Source: Lytechinus pictus
Lineage: Eukaryota
Length of the DNA stretch: 64,000 nucleotides
Assembly (NCBI RefSeq): GCF_037042905.1
Contig: NC_087249.1
Span: 28,086,001 to 28,150,000, forward strand
Reading direction: 5' to 3'
This document shows positions 6,401-55,184 of the stretch, one piece after another. The notes beneath the pieces are model-generated. The model ran no database searches. It was not told the DNA's origin and saw only the letters and a program-made list of their open reading frames with translations. Positions within the stretch are counted from its first letter, which is position 1. Each line of letters opens with the position of its first letter. Both the position numbers and the translations under genes were made by a program.

Positions 6401-7037
6401 TATCAATCATAAAAGTCATCCCTACCATCAAATACTAAGCTTTATGTGTTTCTGGGCCCTGGTCCACTCCTATCTCCTGCTGTTTGGATTGACATTGATC
6501 TGCGATGTTGTGTTCATGAAATTAATGTCAATATATAAATTAGTAACCATACCACGGTGAGATTTCAACTGTAGTTAAAGGGGGATGACTTTATAATATA
6601 AAAGTAACGTTTTTAGCATTTATACTAGTTTAATGAATCATTGGTGGTAGTTATATTATATTATAAAAAGAGGTTATTAAAATGTTTAGTAGCTTTTAAA
6701 TATCAAAGATAAATGTACCATTCATACTTCTTCAGAATTTATATAACCAGTTTGAATGTTAATTTTTTTTTTCATGTATAGATTAAAAGACAGTGAAAGG
6801 AGTAAAGAGAAGCAGCAGCAGGCAACCTCACAACCAGGAGAAGAAGACATGAACTCAGAAGAACACCAACAGGAAGGCATGCACCGTATAGAGGATGCAG
6901 CACTGGAAGAACATGTAGCGAGGTTGATAGAAGAAAGAGATACGTTACTAAGAACTGGGGTTTATACACATCAAGATAGGATTATTAGTGAACTAGACAA
7001 GCAGATAAGACAAGCCATTGCACAGAAAGGGTCATGA
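273..7037 (+). CDS. CEP120: Centrosomal protein CEP120, 3' part (C-terminal coiled coil). Coding exons 273-422, 832-921, 1924-2129, 3385-3556, 4458-4702, 6782-7037; 5' exons lie upstream of the window
   Basis: The spliced translation [20 protein letters not shown]...[23 protein letters not shown]...[18 protein letters not shown]...[29 protein letters not shown] closely matches the vertebrate CEP120 C-terminus as recalled. All introns are GT-AG with consistent phases. Confidence 0.95.
581..715. mobile_element. Small palindromic MITE
   Basis: taccttagtcacatttgctc..ccgtacggcgagt pairs with actcgccgtatgg..gagcaaatgtggctgaggta. Confidence 0.75.
832..921 (+). CDS. CEP120: CEP120 exon ([30 protein letters not shown])
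   Basis: AG at 830-831, GT at 922; 90 nt. Confidence 0.92.
1269..1584. mobile_element. MITE with ggcccgtattctgaa TIRs (copy 1), inserted in an older ttggtcta/tagaccaa sub-repeat element (about 1155-1860)
   Basis: 15-bp TIRs; an inverted sister copy lies at 7856-8161. Confidence 0.85.
1924..2129 (+). CDS. CEP120: CEP120 exon ([12 protein letters not shown]...[11 protein letters not shown])
   Basis: AG at 1922-1923, gtaagc at 2130; phase 0/2. Confidence 0.92.
3385..3556 (+). CDS. CEP120: CEP120 exon ([13 protein letters not shown]...[17 protein letters not shown])
   Basis: Lies within ORF 3374-3568; AG at 3383-3384, GT at 3557. Confidence 0.93.
3960..4388. mobile_element. Non-autonomous hAT-type DNA transposon
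   Basis: TIR cagcgcttctcaa / ttgagaagcgctg; exact 8-bp TSD atctaata at 3952-3959 and 4389-4396. Confidence 0.9.
4458..4702 (+). CDS. CEP120: CEP120 exon ([33 protein letters not shown]...ELNR)
   Basis: Overlaps ORF 4485-4712; AG at 4456-4457, GT at 4703. Confidence 0.95.
5024..5618. mobile_element. Non-autonomous TTAA-flanked DNA transposon (Kolobok-like AG..CT termini)
   Basis: ttaa|aggggaatcca ... tggattcccct|ttaa. Confidence 0.8.
5670..6460. mobile_element. ggggccc..aacacaaag-type MITE interrupted by a nested insert (about 5730-6385) containing a 57-bp direct repeat and a palindrome of about 164 bp
   Basis: Termini ggggcccataacacaaag / ctttatgtgtttctgggccc; an uninterrupted relative lies at about 61285-61407. 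Confidence 0.65.
6782..7037 (+). CDS. CEP120: CEP120 terminal coding exon (…[37 protein letters not shown])
   Basis: Lies within ORF 6756-7037; AG at 6780-6781; TGA at 7035-7037. Confidence 0.95.
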
Positions 7038-7855
7038 CAGCAATGATAGAAGGAACAACTGCTGCTCGAAATTGAGGATTCTACAGAAGAAATCATTATT
7101 TTTTTATGATTATATACAATCAAGACTGGATGGTGTTAGACAAGCAGATAAGATTGGCCATGGCACAGAAAAGGGTCACAACAGCAAGGGTAGAGGGAAC
7201 AACTGAATTTGATTGACAGACACTTGGAAAATTCTAGAAAGGAGTTGATAATTTTGTTAATGACTTTGTTGAAGAAAACTAGACAAGCAGATAAGACAAA
7301 TCATTTCAGATGGTGTTGTTGAGGTTTATATACCATCAAGACTCAATTGAAAGTGAACGAGATAAAGAGATATGATTACCTTGTAAAGGATGAGTGAAGG
7401 GCTGTGGCTGGAAAATAGAAAGACAGCCATGAGGAGTCTAGAGAAAATAGATGCTGTTAAGGTTTGTTGGTTTATCAGTGAAACCAACTAAAACAAGACA
7501 AGCTGTTCTAAATACACCATTAAGCCAACATAAATAAAGGGCCCAATTGCATAAACGTTACAGTATTAGTATATTACTATATTATAGTAACTTTGCCTTC
7601 CTATCTTAATAGGACCTACTCAGATTCAACATTTTGACAAGTATGTTCTTCGCAAATTTTGATGAGTATAAAGTTGAAAATGAGGCTGTTCTACTCCCAT
7701 GATGGTGCTGTATGCATGAAATTTCTACAAAACACAACAAAAATCAATGATTGGCTGGAATGTTCTCAGTGGAGTGTTCATGTGGGGTGACTAACAATTA
7801 AAAGTTTCTAAGTAGTTCCTACCTCGGATCTCTCCTTTCCAGCAAAGAATACATG

Positions 7856-16093: not shown

Positions 16094-17165
16094 CAGGTTT
16101 AACAGCATGTGTTTCATGTATTGCATTTTTAGTTATCTAGCACACAGATAGCACATGGTTCTGAAACTAAAGTGTTCCAGTCATACTGTTAGGAATCAAC
16201 ATTGTTGATTGATACGGCACTATGTACAACAATAAAGCTAGTCTTGAGTTATGAAATCATTTCAAGATAAACTTGTTTAAATGGTTCTTAATTTCTGGGA
16301 AGGTTAATTACACTATCATAATGCAAGGAAAACATATTTACATACTCGGCATAACCCTGTAGATGATCACAATCAATGAAAAGAACATTTCACATCTGCA
16401 CATAATGAAACCACATGTCCATGTGCACACGCATAAGCTCTTTCCAAATGTTGCAAATCATCATGCTGAAAGTTATTATTACTGAAATAATTTACTATCT
16501 ATACATTACCAATTTGAACATTCATTGTAAGGACAATATGGTTTAAAAAGGGGTTTTAGTCCCAATCCACATACAGAACTCCTTTAGTACTCAAAATTAC
16601 TTCAGATAATTCATCTATGATTGGCCAAAATTGTACATCAAAGGAATGCTATTTTTACAAAAATTATTCCACTTTTAAAAAAATCTTTCTACTTGCTTTG
16701 TATTTGAAGTGAAAGTTCCCTTACCTTATGTATTCAATGACCTTAATTCATCCCAAGTGGGCTCAATATACCTCTAATATCATTTTGGAAACATTGTTCC
16801 TTTCAACATCATACTTCACAGAATCATGCAGTAAACATCACATGAATCCATGCATGTATTCATACCGTTTTTTTGTGAAACGAAAGCTACATTCACACAG
16901 AAGTATGACAATCTTATTTCATATAAATTCTGAAATCTACAGAAAATAAAGGAATTAGAATTACACCCCTTTGAACTCTGGAATAAGTTATCTTTCCCAT
17001 CAGGAACCCTGTAACACAAAGCCTAGCAATGATCATAGAAGACATTTTAAAGAAATAATAGCATTGACCACAATGTGTGATCAATCTTAAAATCAAGGAT
17101 ACGATCAATAACAAAGCTTTGTCTTACAGGCCCAGATGACTCTTTCCTACCTCAGACAGAGACAT

Positions 17166-17523
17166 CTAAAACTGTGAGAATCCCGGGGGTGGACGAATGC
17201 CCCCTTTGGGTTTGTAGCCAGATCCATGGAATTCTTTAGCGTGGACATTGAGGCGACTACCCTTACTCCCACCACCACCACCACCAGGGGATCCTTTCCT
17301 ACCACGGGAGGAGTCTCTACCGCCACCGTAGGGCACCGGGGACACCCTATCAGGGTTGGAAGAGGGTTTGAAGGCTTGAGGACCGGTCTGAAAGGCTGGA
17401 CTGGAATGAGCCATGGGGTTGAAGCTGTTCCCATCCTGAGTAGACCAAGGGATTTGGGAGTTGCCGTTAGCGCCCCTCTGATGATGGCGACTGTCGGGGA
17501 CCATGGGGCTCATTGGCGGGGTC
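17166..17523 (-). CDS. YTHDC2: YTHDC2 last coding exon, low-complexity tail with PAM2-like and PPPGF motifs
   Basis: Acceptor ttcccctggacag; phase 2 places it in the frame of ORF 17166-17513, ending …[30 protein letters not shown]. Confidence 0.82.
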
Positions 17524-20500
17524 CTGTCCAGGGGAAGTGGAAAAGAAATAGAACTATATTAGAAAATAATGAAGAGAGATTTCTATCCTGTGAGGCTCTG
17601 CATATGAAGGAGGTCAGATATTATGTACAAATAAGAAAACACTGCAATGCCAGTACATACAGCTACAGGAATTTGGTAGAAAACCTGGAACAAATATGTC
17701 CGTAAACGAAATAATAAACAATATATCCTACATAAATCAGATCCTGATGTACATGACCAACCATATTCTAGCTATGCTGTTGAAACAAAACGCCCATGAA
17801 GAAAATGTGCTATTCCGTGACGTCAATGATAGAATAGTGCACCATTATTCCATCATGGATGTCCCAGATCATGCAATCGCTACGTTCTACTTTCAATTTG
17901 TAATAAAACACTAAACAACGGACCTATCATTGTTTTCATCATTATGACATTGGTGTATAAATAATTATAAGTTCACTAAAAATCACATATCGTTATTTCC
18001 ACTGTTTGTTTGTTATCACTTTCATTTCCAGGGAGAGGGTCAAGTAGAGCATAGAATCTAATAATTCTACCGGATATATTTGTGGATGTATTACCTCTGT
18101 GAGTTATTCCACCTGCCAGCTGGACCACCCCTTGATGTGGGAGACTGTCTCCAGGCTCCCCCTTGACCTTGGTTCTGACCCCTGTAACCACCATTGGTCT
18201 GCTGGTAGGAGGGGCTTGATGGGGGTGGGGGTCGACCACTGCCACCACCACCACCTCTACCACCGTATGCACCTGATTATACAAGATTGAGTAGCATGGA
18301 GGGGGGGGGGGTGTATAGGGTAAAATAAAGAGAAGGGAAGTGAAAGAAAAAAAAATATGGGGAGAAATGGCAGACATTGGGTTTAACTTTAAATTATCTG
18401 TTCAGCCACTGAAGAGAGTTGTTTATAGCAGAGAGTTGAGCTGATTTGGCCTCAGATTGTGACAACACATATTATCTTTTTGTGTGTGCTTTTCAGCGAA
18501 TGCAGTATTCACCATACTATGTTTAAAATGAGCTGGGCTAGCCACATTCTCTAAATTAGAGGCTCTGGTTTGTCTAAGAGCCATCTATTTCAGAAAGTGA
18601 AGTCAATAAGGTCCTACTTTGTCAAAAAATACACAAATTTTCTGTTCTTCCTACGAATAAGTATGCAACATAAAGTGTCAAACTTGATTTATCGACAACT
18701 CTGGTTTGACTTCAGAGCTCTGTATTGAGTGCTTATCCAACTTATTTTTAATATGTAACAACATGTAGCTGACGATTTGTTCAGACCCAGGGCTTGCCCT
18801 GCATAGCAGTATCTGTCACATTAACCTGAATTTGAACTAAATTGACTATACTCTTCAGAAGAATGGCTTTGAAGAATATAATTAGTTTAGTTTGAACTTA
18901 CCTCCCTGTCTCTGATCATTCCCTCTCCAGTTTCCTCTTCCCTTCCCTTGCTGCTGAGAGAAAGAAATAAGTCTCATTACAATCTATATTCATCCATCAT
19001 TTACAATATTCCATGTTTGATTCACACAGGTGATTAACTAAATGCTACAAGAAATACATTCAAATTGAACTTCCATTTATTTTCATTATTTTTTAACCAA
19101 AACAAAAATATTATAGGAGTAATTCCATGAAATAATCATCCCATTTTTTTCCATTGAAAAACTTTAGATAAAAAAATAAATTAATCTAAATTTTCAAACC
19201 TGAATTCAAACTTTAAAATTTTGTTATGTTAAAATAAGTGTATAATTCAATATTCTCATTTATACATCAGTCCATGGGACAAGCTTTACCTGTGAATTTG
19301 CAAAGCGATTTGACAAACTGCCACTAGGAGGGCTGTTGAATTGTTCTATTGCTGTAAGAAAGGAGATTAAAAAATGAGTCACTTTACAAATCATGGCAAT
19401 TCCATATGAGAGATATAATACTGTTATCAACGTTTACATGCCTGTTGACATCTTGCCTTCCATCTTTACAATTCAATAACATGAAATATGCTACCAACTA
19501 TACTGTACTAACATTCAGGATATTAATCAATACTATTAATCCTTTTTCAAAGGAAAACTGTCAAATAAAGTCAAACATGCATTATACCAATACTGACTTC
19601 ATTAGAACTGTACAATTTTGGTTTGTAAAAGCTCATGTGATGTTACCTTTGTATATAACAATGAATATGCACTTTTACAAGTATATCAGAGGACCAATCA
19701 ACATTAAGGCTATTCACAATTTTATTCCTTTCATTATATTAAGTCTTTAACTGATGAAAGGAATATAAAAATGCATAAACTCCATAATTTTGTTCATATT
19801 GATACATATGTGCTTATTACTTTGCATGGGATGATAATAATATTACAGTGTATACAAATTTTAAGTCCAAGTGGGAGGATATTAAAGGAAAATAAGACAA
19901 TAGTGGAAAACACAGTTTAATTATGACACTGAATGGACTAAATTATAGGGATTTATTTTTAAGTACAAATGAGTAAATAATTCTGTGCACTGTCCAACTG
20001 TAACTACCTCAATGACATGTTGAAGAATTCCAATTCATAAATGAGCTGCTGCTTCCAGGTGGGTGTTTACAACATAAAGTTATGAGCAACTTTCCAAACG
20101 ACGGGTGACCTTTCATTGGTAACTAAATCCACATAAAAAAAAAAGGGTGTTTTATTAACCGCGAGAGGATCACCAGTTGTTCATAAAGTTGCTCGTAAGT
20201 TACAAACAGCTTTCTGAAACACCCACCAGGAATAGATGAATTCCCTAATTTAATAGGTACATACCCATTGGTTTAGGTCTCTGGCCAACTCCTACTGGCT
20301 GTTGTAGACCTAGAGATTGTTCTTCATTGGTCAGTACTTTAATCAATGTCTTCAGCACAGCCTGTAAAGATTATTTCATACAAAGATATTGTTTATTAAT
20401 AATAATATTCCGCATTTATATAGCGCTTAATACATCGGAACAACCTCTCTAAGCGCTTTACAGACATATTATTACCCCGGTCATCGGATCCTTGCATGCC

Positions 20501-23500
20501 CGCATACAATGTATGCACCTTCTCCACTCCCTGGGGAGCATTCCAACAAGAGTTCCAAGACTCAATTGCTAGGCATACTACATATTATAGGCTTTCACAT
20601 CCTACCGGGTACCCATTTAACACCTGGGTGAAGAGTGGCAAAGTGTGGATTAACGCTTTGCCAAAGGACGCTAGGCCATGGTGGGATTCGAACACATGAC
20701 CCTCTGATTACAAGGCGAGAGTCAGAACCGCTACACCATGACGCTTCCACGTTATTATCTACTTTCTTCTCTTTAACATGATTCTGAGCATACCATTTTC
20801 TTGGACATTCTCATACATATTCTGATTTGTCATTATCACATTTTGTTATGAAGATGCCATATGTTTTCTTTCAAAGGCTACGACCTTACCCAAATAATAA
20901 ACACTGATTTCATACAGGCAAACATTCAAATTCACTCACAAAAAAAAAAAAAAAAATACAGGGTCTTGGTATCTGGCTACAAAAATAAACACTGGTAGTA
21001 AGAGCTATATTGTTTCTATTCTTAATATTTATTCTAAATCCATAGAATTTAGATCTATAGAAATGATCTAAGAATGAAACGTTATTTGAGACACTATACA
21101 ACATACCTCATCAGCTTGAGACCAAGGCTTAGCTGGAGTTCTCATCCTTCTCATGAACAATGTATGCCATTTGGTCCTTAACTGCAGGACCAAACTCGCT
21201 GACTGTATACAAGGGAAAACAAATTCAATGCTTGTTAGACATCACATACTTGAAGTTTGCCTTTTTGAAAATAGGTTAGAAAACAGAAATATCATGTTTC
21301 AATATTGCAAAACGGAAGACAAATTTCCATAACCAGAAGATGTCTTCCATGAAATGAATTTATAATGCTGCACGACTGATGGGGTACAATGGGGTACTTC
21401 ATTCATCAATTCATTAATTTAGATTATTGTTTTCCTTAATCTAACCCTAATCTACCATATGGGCAAATTTATCCTCATATATTACCATGGACCACACTAA
21501 CCATTGGCTCAGACTTGATGACCAACCACTCATCCAACTTGAGTGTTGCCTTGGCAACCTTGACATCATCATCCTCTCCTTCACTGGAGTCATTAGCAGC
21601 ATCTCCATTGGGTCCCATTCTGGATGCTATGGATGATGCGGTCCCTTCCGGTAGGACAAGGGCATCGTAAGGTAGACGGGTGGGGCCACAGAACAGGGCG
21701 ATGGTGATGGGTGAGATGAGGGTCACACACCGCACACTGGTACGGAAGTGAGAGCTGAGGAAGTTTGGAGACACAGAAATGATGGCTTTGTAAGGACTAA
21801 GGTAGGGGTAATGATGATAACAATAATATGCACTATGTATCATCAGGAAAAGTAAATATCCTGCTATAGGACATAAGTTGATAAATTATCAAGTCTGTCA
21901 AAGTCCTGCTTGATTCTCCAGTGGTGCAAAATATTCACTGACACACAATTGCCACCTTTCGCAATCATCACGGGCGCTAATATTAGGGTCCCCTAACACA
22001 AAAGTTGACGCTTTTGATTTTTAAGATTGATTGTACATTATAGTCAATAGAATCAAACGTAGAAAACTGCTCTACAATCAATGCTAAGATTTGTGTTACA
22101 GGGGGGTTACAGGCCCTACAGATCTGCTTTTCGTGTGCAAAATTCTTTCCCGCGACACCCGCACGCCATACATGCAATGTATTACGACTGATGGCTGGAG
22201 ATATTCGAAATGCAGGACCTAAAATAGAATATGACATGGATAAGAAAGTGGTTTTTCAAACAAATCGAGTACATATTGAGTGAGGAAAAACTTACTAAAT
22301 TAAGGCTTAGATATAGATCATTACAGTCCATCGAATCAATATTGCATTTAATGTGGATTATTGGTGGATCTCTGGCAATTGATTCCATGGGTCAGATCAC
22401 CTCTCTAGCCGAACCCATTTCGCATATGTACACAGCGTATGCAATACGTTTGCATGCGGGTTTCTTTTGTTCACTCCTTCTACACAAACGATACGCCTCT
22501 TGCACACGATGTAAAGGGTATTATGTTTTACTTTCCTCAGAAATGGGGGTTAGATTCAAATTCCGGGGGGACCACTTCCATTGATGGTTGGATACCAGGC
22601 ACGACCATGGGGTTTTGAAAAGTACCCTAAACAAGGGAAGCAAGTCTTTTCCAGATTATGAAAATGCATCTTTTAACAATTATTTGGCTTGTGAAACCCT
22701 ACAAGTATTGGAAATATATCCCTTTTTTCAGTATTTTAATCATCGTTTTTGACACTTTTATAACGTTACATAGGCCTATACGTAACATACTTACCCACTC
22801 TTTCCCTTTTTACGCGTTGTTGCGCCTGGTATCCACTCTTCAATGAAAGTGGGCCCCCCCGGTCTGGGAGGAACCAAATGTGGATTTGGAAAGTCGTCCT
22901 AAATCGGATATATTGCTGTTACCATAGTAGCAACCAGAATTTTGCACACGAAACGCAAATTGAATGTTTCCGTTCCAGATGCGAAACGAAAAAAAAATCT
23001 CATGTCACACAATTTGCATTGCAGGACAGAGTTTTAAGACCATGACGACGGGCCCAAAAGTCTCTTCTAAAATCAACTAACGTCGTAAATAAGCGTTCGC
23101 GTTCTTCCAACAAAAGGTCGGGAATGACAACTTTTGAACCGGGGGTAAAGAAAAAAGGGATAGGGGAAGGGATGGACTTCATGTCTCCTTCATACCTGGT
23201 GAGCTCATCATATAGAAGCCAGTCTGAAGGTAAACTATCCACAGTTCTCATATGCTCCTCACCAAGTGAGGTCTTGCCCTTAGCCACTTCATGGAGTACT
23301 GAGTTGGGATGGAAGCGCACCTTGGATTCCGTTCTGTAATAAACAGAGATAAACAATATCAGCATTGTAATCATCATAGTAGTTGTCATCATCATCATCA
23401 TCATCATCATCATCGTCACCATCATCTCATCATCGTAGTCATCATCATCATCACAATCATCATCATTATTATCATCATCATCTTCATCATCATTATCACA

Positions 23501-26500
23501 ATCATTATCACTAGAGCCACTACCAATCACCCTATTGACCACCACCTTCTTTTGTCACTATTAAGATCACTAATACTAACATGCCAACATTTATATAGTG
23601 CTTAATACGATGTTTCTAACTGCTGCATACTATTATTCCGGCTATAGCAAGGCCACCCTGATCAGGTGCTCGAGCATTCAAGGAATTTCTTCCTACCGGG
23701 TACCCATTTACTACACCTGGGAGGAGAGTGGCAAAAGTAGATAAATGCCTTGCCAAAGGACGTGAGTGCCGCGGTGAGATTTGAACCCAGACCTTGTGGT
23801 TCATAGTCTGGGGACTTATCCACTGAGCCACAACACCTCTACAACAGTAATCCTCATTGCCTAATCCTCAATATCTTTAATCATGCAACTTATAAATCCA
23901 CTCTGCAGAGTGCTCAAGGCACTCATTGTTGTAAGTACTTTGGTTATAGCCCATCCACCATTCCAACACACAGGTAAATCAAGGAATTCCTGGCAGTTAC
24001 CTATTGTAGTTCAGAGATACTATCATCATAAATGTCAAATGAAGATTGTTTCTATAACAAACTATCAGATATGAAAGCCTGAGAAATCATTATTTCACTC
24101 ATCAGTACACTGTTGACAAAGAACTGTAAAGATAAGCGTCCACATCATTGTTTCCAAGAGGATTTATCATGTTTAAAGAATTAAACCGATGGAATTCCAT
24201 TGTCACGATCGATCACAATGCTAAGTGAAACAGGGCCCCCAATATGACTTACTTGGTGGTGAGTTGTCTGCGTTCTCTATCTACTTTGAGGATGTTAGGA
24301 TACATGCCAGCACATAGAGATGCCTTGACCACAGCCCAGTTCTCTGAGTTGGTGTTGAGATCACGGATGTCTCCTGGTCCCCTTGCCCTGACAAAGCCAG
24401 ACGCTCTCAGCTGGCCTAACAGCTGGGTTCTAAACAAGGATAAAATATTTAAAGGGATGGTCGGGCTGAAAGTATGTATAGCTAAATAGATAGAATAGAA
24501 TTCACTGAGCAAAATGCTGAAAATTTCATAAAAATTGGACAACAAATAACAAAGTTATTGAATTTTAAAGTTTAGCAATATTTTGTGAAAACAGTCATCA
24601 TGAATATTCATTAGGTGGGCTGATGATGTCACATCTCCACTTGTTCTTTTGTATTTTATTATATGAAAATAGGTTTATTCAAATTTTTTCCTCCAAGAAC
24701 TAGAAAAATTTGATTGTCAACTGATTTAGTGCATTAGATATTTATTGCTGCAACTTATTTCATTATAAGGGAGACATATTATTCACACAAGTATGAAATA
24801 ATGAAAAAAATATGATTTTATGTAATAACATAATAAAACGGAAAGTGGAGATGTGACATCATCAGCCCACCTAATGAATATTCATGACGACTGTTTTCAC
24901 AAAATATTGCTAAACTTTAAACTCCAATAACTTTATTATTTGTTATCCGATTTTGATGAAATTTTCGGCATTTTGCTCAGTGAATTCTACTCTATGTATT
25001 AAGATACAAATATTTTCAGCCCGGACCATCCCTTTAAAACAATGCAATAACCAAATACAATATTCTGAACCTATTTTAGACACAATTCACATAACCACGA
25101 AGCTATAAGCAAGAATACAGTGCTACTTTATTCGCGATGTAGATTGCAATTGACAAAATAAATGACATGTACTACAAGGTATTTGAAGAACAGATTAAAA
25201 GTGAATTGTGACAAAGAACACTGTGTGGCCAGCAAATAGCATTCCACCAAAATACATACATATATATATATTTCTCTACATCTATGTTTAAGGTGATTTT
25301 TTTGGTCTTCTTTCATTGTTCGTAATGCGCCTTAACGCCCTCTACCTTCGTCTTTATGTGTATTATGACAGAATAAACCCATTCATTGACTTCACCCTTT
25401 CGTAGGATGTAGGCATATATATATATATATATATATTCATGAAGGAAAACAAATATATTTATTCACCCTTCAAGTGCATCTTTCTTTTCATTTTCTCATT
25501 TTCTTAAGTACAGAGACATGCAATTCATAAAATTGTTGATTATTATTTGAATAGACTTCCTCTAATGAGTTTAAACTTCATCTGATCTTTCAAAATAGAT
25601 GTTCAAATGACACAATACTCATTATCATACCTCATTCCAACAATCATCTCCATGGTTGCTCTTGATAAAAAGTTTCTATCACAGAATGTACCTTCCCATC
25701 CATCACTACGAGCTCGCTGCCATGACTGGTACAGATATTCAAATACAAAATCAGACATGATTGAGTGAATGCAGAATTCTAATCATATAATAACATGTGA
25801 TGGAACATTACTATTTCATTTTCAATACGATTTCCATTTGGCAAAAGGTAATATTATTGATATTAACGACTGTACAATTTTTGTCAAACAACAGAATCTG
25901 GCTGTTAAAAACATTAAAATGCATCGACTAACATCTATTCTAATTTAAGTAGAAATATGGTGAAAAGGGCAAGTGCTGATCCTGGTTTTGGAAAATTTAA
26001 GTATGTCAGTGCTGCATATAATTGAAATGTGAATTTACTTGTAACAACACCTCTCCCTGGGAAACAGTGTATGTTACTGATGAAGCTATCCTGTATGAAT
26101 AAGTTTTAATAATAATAATAACAAGGTCATAAGGAACAGCAACTCCAGATAACAAAGGATTTTGGTTTTGTTATTGAGATCTCAGTAGGCGGTGCTGCAC
26201 CATCCCGAGTTTGCTCAATCTCGAGATTTTAGCCCGATCAGCCCTCTTCGCGATTAATCTCGAGATTCATGAAACCCCGTCTGCACCATCCCACGAGGAG
26301 CTATATCTGCTCGAGCGAGGCAACAAGCCCGATATTCCGGGCATGCGCACTTTCGGATCTTGGAGTTTCAACGGCCCGCGCTTTTGAATAACTTCCCGCG
26401 ATATGCAAGCAATGAACTCCTTTCATTAGTACTTTCGCCGAATTCAACCGGTGTTATGCAACAATCCTTTCAGCTCAGCGAGTGAAGAAGTGATGTATTC

Positions 26501-29500
26501 TTCGTGAAATATGATGGCGGAGTAGGAGGCAACGACAGAGAGAGAGAGAGAGAGGGAGAAGGAGGAAAGAAATGCTATTTGCTCACATTTTGCGAAGGAA
26601 TAAGACAACACTGCTGTCAGTGTTGTTATTGAATATGACCATCGTCGATGCGATGAGCGCCTCCCCCTTCGGTCTGGTCTCTCCCGGGGTCTCTCCCAAA
26701 ATCCATTCACTGGTGGGGACACCATCGTTGCTTATGAACGCTATTCGCATGTATAAAGTTGACTTTCGCACGTGTTTATGTTTTGACCAAGGCGGAAGTG
26801 GAACGCGAATTGCATTATGGACTGACGTCATGAATAAATTACCCCGAGTCCAATCTCGAGTGCGTCTGCACCGACGAATTAGCGGGATAATTCGTAAAAT
26901 AGCGCGCTATTTTGCAAATAAACCCGAGTTGACTTGGGATTGCAATCTCGAGATTAATCCTACGAACTAGCGCGATAATTGCGTCTGCACCGCCAACTAT
27001 CTCGAGATTTTTCAGATCGGGATAATTTGCCGGATCAGAAATAGCGCGCTAATTTGAAACTTCGGGATGGTGCAGACGGCCCTAGTGAGAGTGCTTATAA
27101 GCATGACTTGGAGGAAATAAAATACTTTACTAAATGAAGTCACATAGATTGGTGCCTTGATGACTTCTACTGACCTGGAATGCCCTAAGCAAGGCCATGT
27201 GATCACTGAAAGTGTTGGAAGAATATTTCTTGCGGATTTGCATGGCACCACGTTTCTGAGAAGGGTGGCTGGGAAGCACAACTGTGAATAGAGGTGACAT
27301 GAAAAAGTTAGGTTACACAATGAAGTTGTAATGCCTAGAAGAGCGACTAAATCTGATGAGTACTGCTCAACTGTCTCTTCAATAAGTATTGAACAAATAA
27401 GAGATTGATAATTACACTAGTCATACTGAAACCACATACTATAAAACTTCTATCACTTCTATCTTGAAAATAACAGACATGGCACAGATAACAATAACTC
27501 AGATTTATCAACCAGTTATGTATCATTATCATGTATTTACGTATGCCCAAAGGTTGATTCTCAAAACATTGATGGGGCGCACAGCACATCCCTAGCACCC
27601 GTGCCTACATTCGCCACTCGATATAATGCATGAATCTAAGATTTAGCAACAGGTCATGTATTTTTGTAATAACATTGGGGGGGGGAGGCATGCATGCCTT
27701 GCACCCCTGCTTGCATCCACCACTGGATATAATGCATGAATCTAAGATTTAGCAACAGGTCATATATTTTTGTAATAACATGGGGGGAGGCATGCATCCC
27801 TTGCACCCCTGCTTGCATCCACCACTGGATATAATGCATGAATCTAAGATTTAGCAACAGGTTATGTATTTTTGTAATAACATGGGGGGGGAGGCATGCA
27901 TCCCCTGCACCCCTGCTTGCATCCGCCACTGGATACAATGCATGAATCTAAGATTTAGCAACAGGTCATGTATTTTTTGTAATAACATGGGGGGGAGGCA
28001 TGCATCCCTTGCACCCCTGCTTGCATTCGCCACTGGATATAATGCATGAATCTAAGATTTAGCAACAAGTGATGTATTTTTGTAATAACATGGGGGGGGG
28101 GAGGCATGCATCCCTTGCATCCCTGCTTGCATCCGCCACTGGATATAATGCATGAATCTAAGATTTAGCAACATGTCATGTATTTTTGTAATAACATGGG
28201 GGGGAGGCATGCATCCCTTGCACCCCTGCTTGCATCCGCCACTGGATATAATGCATGAATCTAAGATTTAGCAACAGGTCGTGTATTTTTGTAATAACAT
28301 GGGGGGGAGGCATGCATCCCTTGCACCCCTGCTTGCATCCGCCACTGGATATAATGCATGAATCTAAGATTTAGCAACAAGTCATGTATTTTTGTAGTAT
28401 CATGGGGGGGGGGGGAGGCATGCATCCCTTGCACCCCTGCTTGCATCCACCACTGGATATAATGCATGAATTATTCTTACATGGGTCTTTGTAGGCAAGA
28501 GCACACACGATGGTAAGGACTGGATCAAGGCACTTCAAGACAATGGCATAGAGGACCATTTTACCGAGCCTTGGGTCTACTGGCAGGTCTGCTAGGTGAC
28601 AACCAAGCTCCGTCAGGTCCTCCCATTTATCCATAGCATCAATAGACTGTCGACAAAAAATATGGAGGAAACCTTTTGAAACTTGTTAGATCAACATTCA
28701 ACACAGATACTGTAACAGGCATCTAATAAAGTACAAATTGATGTGTCAAACACTGTATGAAATAATCTAATTGTAAATTCTATTTATAAAAGCTTAATAA
28801 GTTTCATATTAGTTTATGTATCCATGTGTAAAATATGAGTGTCTGTAAACACCTTACATCATTAGTAAACTTTTGAGGAGGCCAACGACACATTCCTCAT
28901 GATGTAAAGAGGTCAGTGAGCTCCCAGTAATTCACAATGATGCTTGCTAACTGCACATTTACATAAAATATGTACATCTGACCCCCTACATGTAATACCT
29001 TCCTGAAATGATTCGTGCTTATTCAAAGTTAGAATGTTTTCTACTTCCGAATACAAAGTAATGAAAGCTACAATACTATCAAATTATCATCACTGGTTCA
29101 GTTCATGAAGTGAAATGGGAATGGAGACAGAAGGTATTGGATGTATAAAACAGTTTTAAGGAATTGTGCAATGTACATTTTGTGCAATGTTAGAGAAAAT
29201 AACTTGTTATCATGAATGAATAAATGGTTACTAATAGTTGGAAACCGAAGATATTAGAAGTACCTTGAGTAGATTGACGGCATTCCTGATAGCTACAGTA
29301 GCAGGTGGTTCAGGAGCTCTCTTCAAGAAGTCACCTACTGATGTTTCGTTAGGGGCAAGAAGTTTGGTGTGAAGACACAATTCCTAGAAAGGATAATAAT
29401 TACGTATCAGGTTTTGATATTTTTGCCCATCAGATTCAGTTTCATATTACAGTGATCATTTCACTTCCATCGTTCTTGTTCCCAGAGGAAAGCATGATTC

Positions 29501-35500: not shown

Positions 35501-38500
35501 GGAACATGTTCTTCGGAGCTCAGCTCAGGCAGCTACATAGGGATATTCAGCACAAGAAAGGGTCAACAGTCACGCATAAAGTCAGGCGGAACTTATAAAC
35601 AGTTTTGTGAGCTCGTCCTGTGGTCTTTATTTACCTTTCATCGGATGCTTTGAGAGAAGCGTTTGCACCAAGGCTAAGAAGCTGTTCAACCATCTCTACA
35701 TTGCCTCGCCCTGCTGCAACCATCAGTGGAGTCACACTAGACTCTGAATGTGCATAGTCAACTGTGTTCATTTCAGAGGAAAAAAAAGGAAAAGGACCAT
35801 AACGCACAGTCACAATACCAATTTGGCTTCAAAGTTTTGCGGAGGATGATGTACTCCTCAGATGCTTCACGTTATAGAAAAGCTGAACAATGACGTGAAA
35901 GTGAAATAGATTAACTTTGTTAAAAGCTTCAATTAATATACATTCTAAATTCAAAAGAACCATTGTCTTTAAGAGAATGTTTGTATATTTTCCATGCCTA
36001 CAGGCTTGCAATCTAGATGAAGAAGTCCTTGGCTGGGAATGATTCAAGTGATAACTGAAATGAAAAACTAATGTCTAGTATGGGAAAACTAATAACTACG
36101 CCACTCACCACTGACATTCTCATTGAGGAGAAGGTAGAGGAGTTGAGAGAAGTAATCATCATCACCTGTCTTCCAACAGTCTGAGAGGGCGCTATCCATA
36201 TCATGGATGAGCCACTCTGCCATGTCCTCAACATCAATAGATGTCTGTGAGAATAAACAAGATTTTTCATTTAACTTTTGAGCATTATGTCTGTGTCAAA
36301 TCGTGTGTTTATAAAAATAAACAAGACATAACTGATTTATCAAGAAACATCTGGCATGCTTTAGGATAGCCAACTTGAATAAAAGAAAGCAGAATCTAAT
36401 TCAAGGTAATATCAAAAGATCAATTGTAAAATTTAATTTCAAAACAAAGAGTACACTATCACAATTTGTCCCCATCCTTCATATAAATCTATTTTCACTT
36501 TTACATGAAATTAGTAATTAATGAATAATTTAATCAGTAATTGATCATCATTATTGTAACATTCATTCATATACCAATAATATTCCTACAACACCATTTC
36601 AAATCATTGTAATTTTATGTTTATTCTGTTGATTTTTTAATGTATGTTTGTTACTGTGTTTAATCATTTGAAAATGAAAATAAATCCAACTGACATTAAA
36701 CTGGAATAAGATGATCCTACTTTGCTGGACTCAAGGACATTTTCTTTCAAAATTCTATTTAATCATCTTTTCATATTAACCGTCTGCTTGCTGAACCAAA
36801 AGCAAGGCACCATATGGATGGTGATGAACTATATTCTTACATCAGCTGCAGATGGTCCCATAGTTGTAGCTCGGAAGTCTCTTGATAACGAGTCTACTGA
36901 TGGGTGCACAGGAGCCACTGAATGGCCCTTGCTTGCTGAGGCTCCGCCTACCTGGTCAGTATTGTACCATTTGTTGAGCTGTTGTTGTTGCTTGGCAACT
37001 GATGGATAGCAAGTGGAAAGAATCTTACTTTACCAAAGGATGGTATATTAAAACAATATCTAATCACAAAACTGAATTTATAAAGATACAAACTGATGAC
37101 AAACATTTACATATTTATTGTAAATAATGGTACATGGAACATATGCAAGTTTCTAGGAAAGAAAACTAATGTGAAGATAAAAAAAACTCAAAATAATCAA
37201 AAAACGTAAATTTTTTCAATTTTCCTGATTATGACCAGCATGAAATACGATTGCAGGGATTATTCCAGTCAGTATATTTAAGAAAACCTCTTGAAATCCA
37301 AATAGAAACCACATACATATTAAAGAAGTATTCCTTTTCTTATGCATACATGATAAAAATTCTTCAGTTCTTTCAGTCCTACCATGATACCATTACCTTT
37401 TCCTTTCTCCTTCTGATATTCAATCATCTTTGCATTTGTGTACCGTGTGCTGAATAAATGAAAAAGAAAGTTTTAACATAATATAAAAAGAAGCATGATT
37501 TAGGATATATTTTTCCCTGTAGTAGAATCATATTCAGGTCAAATTATAATTGTTTAGTACCAGTCCTAATTACCATCACACATTTCTTAATTACGACACA
37601 AAATTATTCATTATAATTACTTCATGTCTCATAAATGCTAGTTCAAGTTGTGGTAACAAACAAAAAATGAGTTTGATATAATGAAATGACCATTAAAGAA
37701 TTTGTGTATAAATAAAAAGAAATAAGTGCCAAATGATTCCAGTAGGAAATGTGAAATTGCTGAGTGATTAACCAAACCATTATGGCATTCCAGTTTGGTG
37801 GGGTTTTCCCCCAAGCAATAATATTACACATGTGCGTGCCTGTGTTGCTGATCTTCAGAGTGGTCATTTTTCAGTCAAGATTTCATGACTTCAAAAAGTT
37901 CAGTTCATGTAAAGATCTAGGCCGAGGCTGAAATAATGACAATTAGCCTCGGTTGATATCAAAATCTCTCTCATGAAATCATTGCTACTGTTGACAATAC
38001 AGTTCAGTAGTCTAACTTTTAACCTTTACTGCCTCATTGTGACTTACCACTTCAGGGCATCTTCAAGAAATAGCTCTTCAACATCAAACATATTTCCTGG
38101 AACTAGAAGACAATGGAAAGAAACAAATTCAATTAAGCATTCATTTCTCCAGATAACATATCATATTTCTCTTCTATCTTTGCTGAACATCACATAGCAG
38201 TAGCATAGCAATTTACACATATACAAAACATACAAACGGTGGGGAATGTTTGTGTTTACATACATAAATATCGGTTGCTGGCATCAAACAAGGGTTTTCA
38301 TTTCTTTTTACCAGAGGACAATTTTCCTTCCCTATCAGCAATATGTCTCTCTCACTCTTCATGGTTCTGAATATAATCAAGAATGCAGCTCACATTTACA
38401 CAATAAAAAAAGTCATTGAGACCGCACTGCACAGTTACCACCTACAAGGTTTGAATCAATATCAATTATCATCAAAACAATAATGAACGGATGAGAACCG

Positions 38501-41500
38501 AGCAAAATGTAAGAAAACAGATTCACCTACCAGAGACAATGGGGCAGTTATTGAAGTAGCGTACAAAGAGTTGAACGTCAAGGGCAGCACTCATGAGAAC
38601 AAGTGTGAGATGTCTTTTCCTTGTCATGAGGTCTCTGATCTGAGTCACAAGGAAATCACTAAATCTATCCCTCTCATGAATTTCATCCTGGTTTGGAAGA
38701 TAACAAAAGGAAAAACACTAAATAGTTGAACAAGTCATCACGGATTTGTAAATTATAGCAGCACAACACAACACAATATAATTAACATAAATTAAAATGA
38801 TTTTAAATTCGAAATCTAGAAAGCTTTGAATATGCGTAAAACAATATAAATGGTAAAATGTTTCCTGTTAAATATAAGTTAAACGATCATCTTAAAAGAT
38901 ATTTCATGCATACTGCATATTTCATTAACACAAATGACAAAGCTTTCCACTCATATGTGACCACGTAACATGTTGCAAGAGGTGGAGAGGAGGGGTTTTT
39001 TGCATCTCAACTGAATAGGAGTTTGATGGACACTTACAATAATAACATGAGTGATTACATCAAGGGCTGCATCTCCTGTCATTAGGGTTCGTAGTAGAAC
39101 ACCGTTGGTGCAATAAGTAAGCAGGGTCTTCGGTGAAACTCTGCAAGTGAAAAGACATAGAATTATCTGAAGGTAGATAAGAATTACAAGTGTATTTCAC
39201 AGCACTTTGAGCAGTCGTAGATTGATAAAGTGCTATAATGTATAAAATTGGAAATTGGAAATTATTATTATTATATCAATCTGTATTGAAATTTTAATCA
39301 AACTACTGTTTCATAAATCCAAAATCAGCAACATGTTCATGAATGAATAATTTCTTTTCAAAAAGGAGAAAACTCCACCCTTATTCTCCATGCCCCTTTA
39401 AGGATGGTAATCACATACAAGCTCTAATGGCAAGTGCTGAAGATTCTTGTGGTCAAAGTAATGTGTAAGGCTAAGTCGTAAAAATGGGTATTGACTTAAT
39501 AATGGTGGTAAAGGTTTTAGAATAGGTGTAGATACAGAAGTAGGAGCAACAGATTTAACCCTAAAAGAGCCGGATTATTGGGACCCCTCTCACAGGGGGG
39601 GGGGGGGGGTGGTGGATTACGCCCCCCCCCCTGAGATTTCGGCCTTCGATTGCACGAGCGCCGCAAAAATTTGCAGTGGTATTGTGCGACACCACACCAC
39701 ACGGCTGTATGGTTAATTTTTTGAAATAAGATTTTTCATTTAATGAATTATTTATGCTAATTTATGTATGAAATAAAACATTTGCTCTAATCAACTATAA
39801 TACGGCCCCAAAACTGCTAATTTTTTATTCTCAGACTCTTTGTAGAATACCGATCAAAAAATTTGGAATCACAATTTTTCTGATGTATATTTTATTTCTT
39901 ATGAATTTCTTTGTTTTTTTACTTTGTTTTTTATTGGTTTTTTCAATAGGAATTGCTGCAGACTTAATTCTGATCATAAACAAGACAAAATTAATTAAGT
40001 TTAATCAGTAAAAGTAGAAATAATGATACATTTATGAATTTTGGCTAAGTACACAATTTGCATTGGATTAAATGAATTTGTACATAAATTCACGTTTTTG
40101 AGCAGTTTTGGGTTTGACATGCACCTAATGTTGCGTAATTTCGTAACCGCAGACCTGGGCATCGCAAATTTGGTCTCAAAAGTTGTGCAAGATTTGAAAG
40201 TAAAAAGCTCCCCGGGCCTTTTAGGGTTAAGGTAGAGCACTTCTTACAAAATCAGATATTGACTAAAAATATAGGGTCTGTCCTTGACATCCGATGTAAC
40301 TGCATACCTTTCTATTTCTACTTTTCTGTTGCCAATATTTGAAATGCATACCTGCTTTCTAGTCTAATTTGATAACCAACTGTCTGACCTATTGCCTCTC
40401 CTCTTTCAGCTGCAACCCTCTCAGATACTGAAAGGGCTGATATCCGTCTAGGCTGGGTACAGATGATGCGACATGGCCTTTTCATTTCAAAGCATTCATC
40501 CAATATGAATTGAGGAAGCTGTTCAAATGAAGGAATATTTTACTGTTATATGAATAACGGGATAACGTAGTATTTATATTACGCAATTGTCTATTTGTCT
40601 ATTCAAAGGCACACAATATATAATCACAACTTAAGCTCCAGGTGCTCTTTCAAGAGCTGAGTGCATTCAAGAAATCAATCCTGCCAGATAGCCATTCACC
40701 CAACCTGGGTTGAGTGCAGCACAATATGGACACTTTTCTTGCTGTAGGAAAACACTGCATGGTTGGGACTCAAACCCATGACCTTCTGATTGAAAGATGA
40801 GAGTCAAACCACCTGATCATGATTTCACTTCTTATATTAATGTTAGGGTCAACTAGTGGCGTTTTAAGCAGTGAAACTGTCCATGGGGGAGGGGATGATC
40901 TATAGAGTTCCCCTCCCCGTCAAATAGTGAACACACAAAAATTTCTGCCAGTGTAAGGTCATAGGCCTTATCAATCGGCTGATTTTCACATGAAATATTT
41001 CCCCCTCCAACATCAAAAAGTGGAATAATTGAATAACAAGATTTTTTTAAAGATGTACCTGAGTTGTCTTTCCAGATCCAGTATCACCAACAACTAGGAC
41101 TACTCTGTTATTATTGATGGTTGCAAGTATTTCATTCCTCATAGCATAAACTGGCAGCGTCTGACGAAAGCTATCAAGATCTGACCGATTTCTCTTGGAG
41201 GGCACCTGAGGAAGACTGCTGTTGAGACGTCCAGTCGCTTTGTTCATCTCACGGGCTGGGTTTACTGTTAATCATATACATGGGAAAGATTTAGCTGTAA
41301 CTCTATTTTGAATCAGCTTTTCAGAGCATGTTTTTACTGGGTGGTTGATGACTCCCTTGTCAAATCTTGGCTTTAAAATGTCCAACCTCAGACATTCGCA
41401 CAAATCTTTATATGAAACATGGAGGCATAGTTTTTTTTTATCATTTTTTGTTTTTTTGATAATCAAATGGTTTGGTAATCAATACTTTAAAAAATCATGC

Positions 41501-54657: not shown

Positions 54658-54904
54658 NNNNNNNNNNNNNNNNNNNNNNNNNNNNNNNNNNNNNNNNNNN
54701 NNNNNNNNNNNNNNNNNNNNNNNNNNNNNNNNNNNNNNNNNNNNNNNNNNNNNNNNNNNNNNNNNNNNNNNNNNNNNNNNNNNNNNNNNNNNNNNNNNNN
54801 NNNNNNNNNNNNNNNNNNNNNNNNNNNNNNNNNNNNNNNNNNNNNNNNNNNNNNNNNNNNNNNNNNNNNNNNNNNNNNNNNNNNNNNNNNNNNNNNNNNN
54901 NNNN
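54658..54904. other. Assembly gap (247 N) next to a CT-rich microsatellite
   Basis: Run of N. Confidence 1.
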
Positions 54905-55184
54905 NTCTGCATATGTATCAATGTAGGCCTATATATAGGGCAGAGATATTGTGCAAAAACTTTTATTCCATCGGGTAAAGCATGTACATGTATCTCATTT
55001 GGTGTAGTTTGGTTATGGTTATAGTGTTCTACTAATAAACTTTTATGAGCCATCATTTTATGGCCTATTTCATTGTTTTACTCATTATTTTCTTGTTTCT
55101 AATGCATAACTGGAAAGTACGGTGGTAAATAAACAATAAAACTGTAATCCATGCATATATATTATGCAAATAAGCTGATCACAT

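What the first reader, a model, noticed from the sequence alone, without database searches (positions are those of the whole stretch)
17223..17258. PAM2-like poly(A)-binding-protein (MLLE) motif [12 protein letters not shown] near the YTHDC2 C-terminus
Seen: [12 protein letters not shown] in a disordered context, 19 residues before the stop. Established: the PAM2 consensus is xxLNxxAxEFxP (Paip2 SNLNPNAKEFVP; eRF3 QLNVNAKPFVP and NVHAAEFVP), with L3, N4, A7 and F10 as key positions. All four match and only P12 is replaced by G. I am not aware of a PAM2 motif in vertebrate YTHDC2. Inference: this helicase may be tethered to mRNA through PABPC on poly(A) tails instead of through m6A.
Basis: partly seen in the sequence, partly recalled or inferred. 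Interest (0 to 1): 0.82.

Follow-up and report, generated by a model that had tools for sequence, protein, structure and literature searches.

The report
PAM2-like motif in YTH-less YTHDC2 tail
An animal version of the germ-cell RNA helicase YTHDC2 has lost its m6A-reading domain, and its floppy tail instead carries a short peptide that closely resembles the docking motif used by many proteins to bind the poly(A)-binding protein; binding is plausible but unproven.

Summary
[12 protein letters not shown] is encoded at 17258..17223 on the minus strand, in the RNA-supported last exon of a YTHDC2-type helicase, 18 residues before the stop. The helicase has R3H, DEAH core with ankyrin insert, HA2 and OB. 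Seven spliced 3' exons share one open frame containing the motif. No YTH domain is in the transcript, the window or the contig.

The peptide meets every published PAM2 position (L3, N4, V5, A7, E9, F10) except Pro12, which is Gly. Pfam PAM2 scores 18.0 bits against a cut-off of 20. That would rank fifth in this genome.

It is a hydrophobic/charged island in a Gly/Pro/Ser/Gln/Arg-rich, structure-less tail. A close relative keeps it, with only synonymous changes, but the whole tail is constrained, so this is not motif-specific.

The genome encodes a canonical PABPC MLLE domain. A complex prediction gave weak support (0.38 against 0.02 for controls).

Working motifs that depart from the canonical PAM2 exist. 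The same octamer without Pro12 occurs in insect-like Paip1-type genes. Mouse YTHDC2 co-precipitates PABPC1 after RNase.

Verdict: probably (about 0.55) a lower-affinity PAM2 variant, a new candidate member of a known motif class. No distant orthologues could be retrieved, and binding is untested.

The parts
17223..17258 (-). PAM2-like 12-mer [12 protein letters not shown]
   Evidence: Direct translation. Pfam PF07145 gives 18.0 bits, E 0.0023, cut-off 20, aligned over [10 protein letters not shown].
17229..17252 (-). Canonical PAM2 core LNVHAKEF (positions 3-10)
   Evidence: Translation. It fits LNxxAxx[F/W] (PMC7356810) and --Phi-(P/V)-A--F- (PMC2854688). It is the only such match in the window's six frames.
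17166..17523 (-). Last coding exon of the YTHDC2-type gene (stop TAG at 17168-17166; acceptor AG at 17525-17524). It encodes a Gly/Pro/Ser-rich tail without predicted structure.
   Evidence: RNA contigs X1, X5 and X11 join about 17522/3 to about 18094/5. The junction is canonical after a 1-base shift. The frame is continuous. The AF2 model has no secondary structure, pTM 0.13.
17178..17192 (-). PPPGF, a PPG-hydrophobic peptide of the kind bound by GYF domains, 3 residues before the stop
Evidence: Translation. GYF-domain genes exist in the genome. Not tested further.
18095..18272 (-). Penultimate exon, RGG/Gly-rich low-complexity segment
   Evidence: Joints, fixed; translation.
18902..18950 (-). 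Small coding exon
   Evidence: Joints 18270>18900 and 18950>19290; canonical splice sites.
19290..19351 (-). Small coding exon
20265..20361 (-). Coding exon (..[19 protein letters not shown]..), end of the conserved post-OB region
21107..21202 (-). Coding exon ([32 protein letters not shown])
21502..21754 (-). Coding exon, end of the OB region (acceptor AG at 21756-21755)
   Evidence: Single copy in the genome.
23003..24554 (-). ORFs holding the OB-fold exons
   Evidence: Pfam OB_NTP_bind partial hits, E 0.0021 and 0.14.
28374..28685 (-). HA2 (winged-helix plus ratchet) exon of the DEAH/RHA helicase
   Evidence: Pfam HA2_C 42 bits, HA2_N 23 bits. The nearest solved chains are DHX36.
35634..35828 (-). 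Ankyrin-repeat exon lying between the two RecA-domain exon groups
   Evidence: Pfam Ank 27.2 bits. It sits between the motif I/II exons (41271-38526) and the RecA2 exons (33962-32893).
38526..41271 (-). RecA1 exons with intact motif I (GDTGSGKT) and motif II (DEIHER)
   Evidence: Read directly in the ORF translations. Weak P-loop/DEAD hits.
49411..49608 (-). R3H-domain exon
   Evidence: Pfam R3H 25.6 bits, E 1.3e-5, partial profile.

Best explanation
The peptide is a working PAM2-type short linear motif, probably of reduced affinity. It sits in the disordered C-terminal tail of a catalytically intact YTHDC2 orthologue that has lost its YTH domain. Leu3 and Phe10 would insert into the two hydrophobic pockets of the MLLE domain of cytoplasmic poly(A)-binding protein. 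Asn4 would stabilise the beta-turn and Ala7 would pack against the MLLE methionine. Gly12 loses the extra contact that Pro12 normally makes. This would dock the helicase on PABPC-coated poly(A) tails and so bias it to the 3' ends of mRNAs. The RGG-rich segment and the terminal PPPGF peptide would add RNA and effector contacts. Shown: the sequence, the frame, the transcript, the absence of YTH, the fit to the motif definition, the presence of a canonical MLLE in the genome, and conservation in one relative. Inferred: binding and its consequence.
For: The motif is in the only open frame of an RNA-supported spliced transcript. It fits every defined PAM2 position except 12: Phi3=L, polar4=N, 5=V, invariant A7, preferred E9, invariant F10 (PMC2854688; core LNxxAxx[F/W], PMC7356810). 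Pfam PAM2 gives 18.0 bits, E 0.0023. In the whole genome only four sites score higher (27.7, 26.2, 22.3, 22.2 bits); two of them look by eye like Ataxin-2 and eRF3 PAM2s. It is an island: the motif holds 1 of 3 Leu and 1 of 2 Glu of a 230-residue tail that is 21% Gly, 13% Pro and 13% Ser, and 0.04% of shuffles give the core. The tail has no predicted structure. Relative B keeps the peptide, with three synonymous third-position changes in it. The genome encodes a PABPC MLLE with KITGMLLE and conserved pocket residues. Complex prediction, MLLE with the 40-residue tail: ipSAE 0.38 (runs 0.38-0.39), best of 3 controls 0.02, verdict 'weak support'. That mark was reached by 51 of 78 solved complexes and 2 of 108 mismatched pairs. 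At 0.60 or under it was reached by only 5 of those 78 and by all 4 mismatches that passed, of 180. The runs agree in at least 75% of contacts and the partner's pLDDT is at least 54. Precedents for working motifs that depart from the canonical PAM2: LARP4B PAM2w (PMC7356810) and Unkempt's PAM2-like motif, which deviates at one position and whose deletion releases PABPC and shifts binding away from 3'UTRs (10.1101/2023.09.20.558714). The identical octamer followed by T-M, with no Pro12, recurs in insect-like genes where a PAM2 exon precedes MIF4G exons (Paip1 architecture). Those score only 13.5-15.6 bits. HELZ is another RNA helicase with a PAM2 in an unstructured C-terminal half (PMC6769256). 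Mouse YTHDC2 co-immunoprecipitates PABPC1 after RNase (10.1101/2023.01.23.525146).
Against: Pro12, 'usually' present and making an added contact (PMC2854688), is Gly. By my recollection of the ELM LIG_PAM2_1 expression, the peptide would fail it at that position. The Pfam score is under the gathering cut-off. Four to six other sub-threshold sites in the genome score 16.7-17.8 bits, and some of them lie in obvious non-coding ORFs. So a score of about 18 bits alone is not diagnostic. Conservation was seen in only one close relative, where the whole last exon is constrained (9 synonymous against 2 replacement codons), so nothing singles out the motif. The complex prediction is weak, was not calibrated on peptides, and may reflect memory of solved MLLE-PAM2 complexes. 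The scan reads very many windows, so some PAM2 look-alikes are expected somewhere.
Confidence: 0.55

Rival explanations
1. A chance look-alike. The tail is a low-complexity RGG/Gly-Pro-Ser region whose job is RNA binding or condensate formation, and LNVHAKEF resembles PAM2 without binding MLLE usefully, because Pro12 is missing.
For: Below the Pfam cut-off. Sub-threshold hits of similar score occur in non-coding ORFs of this genome. Constraint between relatives covers the whole exon, not the motif in particular. The complex score is weak. The scan tests very many windows.
Against: Seven of eight defined positions are met, including both invariant ones. The chance of the core in this tail's composition is about 4e-4. 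The motif is a compositional island. Motifs that depart from the canonical PAM2 and still work are documented. Mouse YTHDC2 associates with PABPC1 independently of RNA.
Confidence: 0.3
2. A real linear motif that serves a partner other than PABPC. Candidates are the MLLE domain of the UBR5/HYD-type ligase, the divergent single-exon MLLE paralogue on contig C15, or an unrelated reader.
For: The genome holds at least three kinds of MLLE sequence: PABPC-like (L004), a divergent RITGMLLE copy (L005, with a second hit 13 kb away) and a UBR5-like one (L006). MLLE also occurs in UBR5 (PMC2854688).
Against: No test separates these partners here. The core is the one preferred by PABPC MLLE. Only the PABPC-type domain was modelled.
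Confidence: 0.1
3. The exon is translated in another frame, is untranslated, or belongs to another gene, so the peptide does not exist.
For: None found.
Against: Spliced RNA contigs from two organisms and stranded reads link it to the helicase exons. The other two frames of the spliced sequence carry many stops. Substitutions between relatives fall mostly on third positions.
Confidence: 0.02

Closest known systems
Canonical PAM2 motifs of Paip2, Ataxin-2 and eRF3 (Pfam PF07145; MLLE ligands)
   Same: Positions 3-10 (L-N-V-H-A-K-E-F) fit the published definition. V5, E9 and the N-V-H-A run also occur in eRF3 PAM2-C. The context is disordered. The genome's own best-scoring PAM2 sites, which by eye look like Ataxin-2 and eRF3, read STLNPNAKEFNP and STLNVGAKPFVPNVNAPAFVP.
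   Different: Gly replaces Pro12. The Pfam score is 18.0, under the 20-bit cut-off. No binding data.
Variant PAM2 motifs that depart from the canonical form: LARP4/LARP4B PAM2w and Unkempt's PAM2-like motif
   Same: They keep the LNxxAxx[F/W] core or deviate at one position, and still bind PABPC MLLE. Unkempt's motif steers the RNA-binding protein towards 3'UTRs.
   Different: LARP4/4B have Trp at position 10; here Phe10 is canonical and the deviation is at position 12.
Paip1-type PAM2 of insect-like genes in host-associated metagenome contigs (L026, L050 and about 15 others)
   Same: Identical octamer LNVHAKEF, also without Pro12 (followed by T-M), also under the Pfam cut-off (13.5-15.6 bits). 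It sits in a protein whose family is defined by PABP binding: a PAM2 exon followed by MIF4G exons.
   Different: An unrelated protein, and the motif is N-terminal to a MIF4G domain. Its binding is inferred from position only. Position 12 is Met, not Gly.
HELZ, an SF1 RNA helicase with a PAM2 in its unstructured C-terminal half
   Same: A helicase core followed by a low-complexity tail with a PABPC1-binding PAM2 (PMC6769256, PMC3135610).
   Different: A different helicase superfamily. HELZ's PAM2 is experimentally validated (F1107V abolishes binding). PABPC1 binding was not needed for HELZ-induced decay of a tethered reporter.
YTHDC2 / Bgcn family (R3H, DEAH with ankyrin insert, HA2, OB, YTH)
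   Same: R3H, intact motifs I and II, the ankyrin exon between the RecA halves, HA2 and OB. YTH-less orthologues were already noted in annelids, a sea urchin, Daphnia, nematodes, Hymenoptera and Diptera (PMC5832417).
   Different: No YTH domain. An RGG-rich tail with the PAM2-like and PPPGF peptides takes its place. Unlike Bgcn, the ATPase motifs are intact.

Membership tests
PAM2 motif (PF07145; MLLE ligand) | Hydrophobic residue, usually Leu, at position 3 | tested here: met
   Leu; definition in PMC2854688.
PAM2 motif (PF07145; MLLE ligand) | Polar Asn/Ser at position 4 and Pro/Val/Thr at position 5 | tested here: met
   Asn4 and Val5.
PAM2 motif (PF07145; MLLE ligand) | Invariant Ala at position 7 | tested here: met
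   Ala7.
PAM2 motif (PF07145; MLLE ligand) | Invariant Phe (Trp in PAM2w) at position 10; Glu preferred at position 9 | tested here: met
   Glu9 and Phe10.
PAM2 motif (PF07145; MLLE ligand) | Pro (usually) at position 12 | tested here: not met
   Gly12. [quoted passage not shown]
PAM2 motif (PF07145; MLLE ligand) | Score at or above Pfam's gathering cut-off (20 bits) | tested here: not met
   18.0 bits, E 0.0023.
PAM2 motif (PF07145; MLLE ligand) | Lies in an accessible, disordered region | tested here: met
   Tail composition. The AF2 model has no secondary structure, pTM 0.13.
PAM2 motif (PF07145; MLLE ligand) | Binds the MLLE domain in a Phe10-dependent way | tested here: inconclusive
   In silico only: ipSAE 0.38 against a best control of 0.02, 'weak support'. 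It needs ITC or a pull-down.
PAM2 motif (PF07145; MLLE ligand) | Conserved in orthologues against diverging flanks | tested here: inconclusive
   Identical peptide in one close relative, with 3 synonymous changes. The flanks are constrained too. No distant orthologues were retrievable.
YTHDC2 family | DEAH/RHA helicase core with HA2 and OB, motifs I and II intact | tested here: met
   GDTGSGKT and DEIHER read in the ORFs. HA2_C 42 bits. Partial OB_NTP_bind hits. DHX36 is the nearest solved chain.
YTHDC2 family | Ankyrin-repeat insertion between the two RecA domains (diagnostic according to PMC5832417) | tested here: met
   The Ank exon at 35634-35828 (27.2 bits) lies between the RecA1 and RecA2 exons.
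YTHDC2 family | N-terminal R3H domain | tested here: met
   R3H, E 1.3e-5, 25.6 bits on a single exon covering profile positions 21-49 of 60. The whole-protein cut-off is 26.8.
YTHDC2 family | C-terminal YTH domain | tested here: not met
   None in the spliced C-terminus. None in any ORF of the window (best E 0.82). None on contig C5; the genome's YTH hits are on C1 and C11 only.

The most novel reading that the evidence does not exclude
In this lineage YTHDC2 exchanged its m6A-reader domain for a tail of short docking peptides: an RGG segment, a PAM2 variant for PABPC and a terminal PPPGF for a GYF-domain protein. These peptides place the helicase on the poly(A)/3'UTR end of mRNAs and couple it to repression or decay machinery. 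This would expose, as a readable motif, a direct YTHDC2-PABPC coupling that in mammals is seen only as an unmapped RNase-resistant co-precipitation.
Probability: 0.3. Interest if true: 0.7.

Novelty: new member of a known kind. Interest (0 to 1): 0.5.

Why it matters
[quoted passage not shown] How it is placed on its mRNA targets is unsettled. m6A binding is dispensable in mouse (PMC8887132), and the YTH domain has apparently been lost repeatedly in evolution (PMC5832417). Mouse YTHDC2 co-precipitates PABPC1 without RNA, but no interface is mapped (10.1101/2023.01.23.525146). A PAM2-type peptide in a naturally YTH-less orthologue gives a concrete and cheap hypothesis to test with peptide, MLLE domain and point mutants: direct PABPC docking. 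It would add a DEAH helicase to the list of PAM2-bearing mRNA regulators, alongside the SF1 helicase HELZ. If binding fails, the case becomes a useful negative example of a PAM2 look-alike without Pro12.

Tried and rejected
(1) Searches for orthologous tails all came back empty, so conservation beyond one close relative could not be tested:
- the 115-residue ORF against the 5.8-billion protein set;
- the 118-residue exon against 1.84 billion representatives with phmmer;
- the 85-residue upstream exon, meant to reach neighbouring contigs;
- the ESM Atlas by features;
- PDB by sequence with the tail and with a post-OB exon;
- a back-translated 10-residue pattern in metagenome contigs.

(2) The 8-residue pattern gave 39 metagenome loci. 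None holds YTHDC2 exons by tblastn. They proved useful only as PAM2 precedents.

(3) I considered a YTH domain hidden in small exons or downstream alternative exons, and rejected it. The spliced transcript has none, phmmer with the genome's own YTH domains finds nothing in any window ORF, and RNA contigs run unspliced through the stop into the 3'UTR.

(4) I considered a second YTHDC2 paralogue carrying the YTH domain. The post-OB exon is single-copy, and the C11 YTH exons look YTHDC1-like by eye.

(5) I considered that the highly covered element at 20400-20800 is a tRNA gene. ARAGORN finds none.

(6) The supplements of PMC5832417 hold accession lists only, no sequences.

(7) A full-length PABPC MLLE from this genome could not be used in the complex job, because it is split over two exons. 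A transcript-derived MLLE 80% identical to the first of those exons (P0005) was used instead.

Full report
THE OBSERVATION. Window 17223-17258 translated on the minus strand reads [12 protein letters not shown]. The plus strand reads something else. The peptide lies in an ORF ending ...[34 protein letters not shown], with the stop (TAG) at 17168-17166. Eighteen residues follow Gly12.

THE TRANSCRIPT. I laid contigs and reads of four public runs on 17001-23000. Two runs (X1, X19) are from the window's organism A; X19 is a stranded RNA-seq run kept as raw reads. The other two (X5, X11) are from a close relative, B.
- One contig per run joins 17124-17522 to 18094-18270.
- Further joints are 18270>18900, 18950>19290, 19351>20265, 20360>21106 and 21202>21502.
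- After shifts of 0-2 bases, all six introns are GT..AG on the minus strand.
- The exons are 21502-21754, 21107-21202, 20265-20361, 19290-19351, 18902-18950, 18095-18272 and 17166-17523.
- Spliced together, one frame is open from end to end and the other two are full of stops. The open frame is the motif's frame.
- The stranded reads lie in the orientation expected for a minus-strand RNA.
- Contig X5 runs on unspliced past the stop to 17001 and about 200 bases beyond, so this is the 3'-terminal exon.

THE GENE. Upstream minus-strand ORFs carry these features:
- an R3H exon (49411-49608, E 1.3e-5);
- helicase motif I GDTGSGKT and motif II DEIHER (41271-38526);
- an ankyrin exon (35634-35828, 27.2 bits) lying between the RecA1 and RecA2 exon groups;
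- HA2 (28374-28685, 42 bits);
- partial OB-fold matches (24554-23003).
The nearest solved helicases are DHX36. An ankyrin insert inside a DEAH core, together with R3H, is the architecture Jain et al. call diagnostic of YTHDC2 (PMC5832417). Unlike Bgcn, the ATPase motifs are intact.

There is no YTH domain. The spliced C-terminus has none. phmmer with this genome's own YTH domains finds nothing in any ORF of the window (best E 0.82). The Pfam YTH model hits only contigs C1 and C11 of the 812-Mb genome, not C5. The post-OB exon is single-copy. Apparent YTH loss in annelid and sea-urchin YTHDC2 was already reported, with a caveat about annotation errors (PMC5832417). Here RNA evidence shows that the loss is real in this organism.

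THE MOTIF AGAINST THE PAM2 DEFINITION. Kozlov and Gehring define PAM2 as --Phi-(P/V)-A--F-P (PMC2854688):
- position 3 hydrophobic, usually Leu;
- position 4 Asn or Ser;
- position 5 Pro, Val or Thr;
- position 7 invariant Ala;
- position 9 preferably Glu;
- position 10 invariant Phe, the main determinant of binding;
- position 12 usually Pro, giving an additional contact.
Grimm et al. give LNxxAxx[F/W] as the canonical part shared by all co-structures (PMC7356810). [12 protein letters not shown] meets every position except 12. From memory, the ELM expression LIG_PAM2_1 would reject it at position 12; I could not check the expression itself.

Pfam PAM2 gives 18.0 bits and E 0.0023, against a cut-off of 20, with the alignment ending at Phe10. 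A six-frame scan of the whole genome with the same model returns four sites over the cut-off (27.7, 26.2, 22.3 and 22.2 bits). By eye, two look like Ataxin-2 and eRF3 PAM2s; the other two are unidentified. Six more sites score 16.7-17.8 bits, and several of those sit in tiny non-coding ORFs. The first look of that scan did not pick up this motif, which would rank fifth. So the score is suggestive in a real coding, disordered context, but it is not diagnostic alone.

CONTEXT AND CHANCE. The 230 residues after the conserved post-OB segment are 21% Gly, 13% Pro, 13% Ser, 9% Gln and 9% Arg. They hold only three Leu and two Glu, and one of each lies in the motif. The core LNxxAxx[F/W] appears in 0.04% of shuffles of this tail. 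It appears once, here, in the 128,000 residues of the window's six frames. A single-sequence AlphaFold2 model of the last exon has no secondary structure and pTM 0.13. The peptide is therefore a hydrophobic/charged island in an unstructured tail, which is the usual setting of a linear motif. Against this stands the very large number of windows the scan reads.

CONSERVATION. In relative B the differences listed inside the motif are 17241 G>A, 17244 G>T and 17253 G>A. These fall on the third positions of the His, Val and Arg codons, and all three are synonymous. Across the last exon I count 9 synonymous codons, including an AGC>TCC Ser>Ser double change, and 2 replacements (N>H, R>H). The 3'UTR differs more. 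The whole tail is thus under purifying selection. That supports a functional coding tail but does not single out the motif. The difference table was truncated, so a few unlisted differences near contig ends or gaps cannot be excluded. No more distant orthologue could be obtained.

THE PARTNER. The genome encodes a PABPC-type MLLE (L004):
- first exon ...[51 protein letters not shown];
- last exon VEEAVQVLMNHQ....
It keeps KITGMLLE and, by eye, the pocket residues named in PMC2854688. There is also a divergent single-exon MLLE (L005) and a UBR5-like one (L006).

Because the PABPC MLLE is split over two exons, I used a transcript-derived MLLE that is 80% identical to the first MLLE exon (P0005 residues 20-109), with the last 40 residues of the tail.
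- The complex test gave ipSAE 0.38 (runs 0.39, 0.38, 0.38), against 0.02 for the best of three controls. Its verdict is 'weak support'.
- The mark was reached by 51 of 78 solved complexes and 2 of 108 mismatched pairs. At 0.60 or under, it was reached by only 5 of those 78 and by all 4 mismatches that passed, of 180.
- The runs agree in at least 75% of contacts, and the partner's pLDDT is at least 54.
- Peptides were not part of the calibration. Because MLLE-PAM2 complexes are solved, the pass may reflect likeness rather than binding.

PRECEDENTS.
- LARP4B's PAM2w and Unkempt's PAM2-like motif depart from the canonical PAM2 and still work. Unkempt's motif deviates from the ELM expression at one position, yet its deletion releases PABPC and moves the protein away from 3'UTRs.
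- A back-translated search for LNVHAKEF in metagenome contigs found 39 loci. Many are evident eukaryotic PAM2 contexts, such as ...[15 protein letters not shown]......[21 protein letters not shown]... and ...[13 protein letters not shown].
- About seventeen of those loci, from host-associated metagenomes, carry [11 protein letters not shown] in an intron-flanked exon. In L026 and L050 it is followed by MIF4G exons, which is the Paip1 architecture. Their Pfam PAM2 scores are only 13.5-15.6 bits. So the same octamer without Pro12 is kept in a protein family defined by PABP binding. Its binding is inferred from position only.
- HELZ shows that an RNA helicase can carry a working PAM2 in an unstructured C-terminal half (PMC6769256).
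- Mouse YTHDC2 co-precipitates PABPC1 strongly after RNase, with no interface mapped (10.1101/2023.01.23.525146).
- No paper in the library connects YTHDC2 with a PAM2 motif.

READING. Most likely (about 0.55) this is a functional PAM2 variant of reduced affinity that docks a YTH-less YTHDC2 on PABPC. A chance look-alike inside an RGG tail stands at about 0.3. A real motif for another MLLE protein or another reader stands at about 0.1. A wrong frame or a non-coding exon is essentially excluded.

But mouse YTHDC2 does not need m6A binding either (PMC8887132). PABPC docking would therefore be an added or alternative placement mechanism, not a simple swap.

The kind of motif is known. The carrier, a DEAH helicase of the YTHDC2 family, is new as far as the library shows. 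The finding is a testable hypothesis, not a demonstrated interaction.

Noticed in passing
The genome has two GYF-domain loci (L019, L020). The last 75 coding bases (17166-17240) show no listed difference from relative B.
   Followed up: partly
window 17166-21754 (-); whole window: This YTHDC2 orthologue truly lacks a YTH domain, and the evidence is at RNA level. It has intact ATPase motifs, unlike Bgcn. An RGG/Gly-rich exon (18095-18272) precedes the last exon.
   Followed up: yes
L026:4460-4603(+), L050:9997-10149(-), and L027, L028, L034, L042-L047, L052-L054, L057, L059: Host-associated metagenome contigs carry an animal-like, intron-containing Paip1-type gene whose PAM2 reads [11 protein letters not shown] (no Pro12, Pfam 13.5-15.6 bits), followed by MIF4G exons. 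This is a conserved PAM2 variant with Met at position 12.
   Followed up: partly
window 20400-20800 (in an intron of the helicase gene): A repeat covered thousands-fold in RNA reads and contigs of both organisms, with many loose ends and internal indels. ARAGORN finds no tRNA gene there. It is probably an abundant, transcribed interspersed repeat.
   Followed up: partly
window 27600-28500 (-): A tandem array of about 100-base units inside an intron next to the HA2 exon, read as repeated ORFs ...[24 protein letters not shown]...[21 protein letters not shown].
   Followed up: no
window 45001-46400 (-): A reverse-transcriptase-like ORF series (LINE-type fragment) in an intron. Similar pieces occur in metagenome loci L028 and L052.
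   Followed up: no
window 1900-7050 (+): Exons of a coiled-coil protein on the opposite strand (for example 1924-2130, 3374-3565, 4458-4709, 6756-7034), convergent with the helicase gene. Not identified.
   Followed up: no
L005 (G000:C15:23431530-23431712) and L007 (13 kb away): A divergent MLLE domain encoded in a single exon (RITGMLLEATNEDVMRMLE...), with a second partial MLLE hit nearby. It may be a PABP-like paralogue pair of unknown function.
   Followed up: no
window 54658-54905: A run of 248 N (gap or masked), flanked by Ser/Phe/Leu-rich simple repeats. Left as it is.
   Followed up: no
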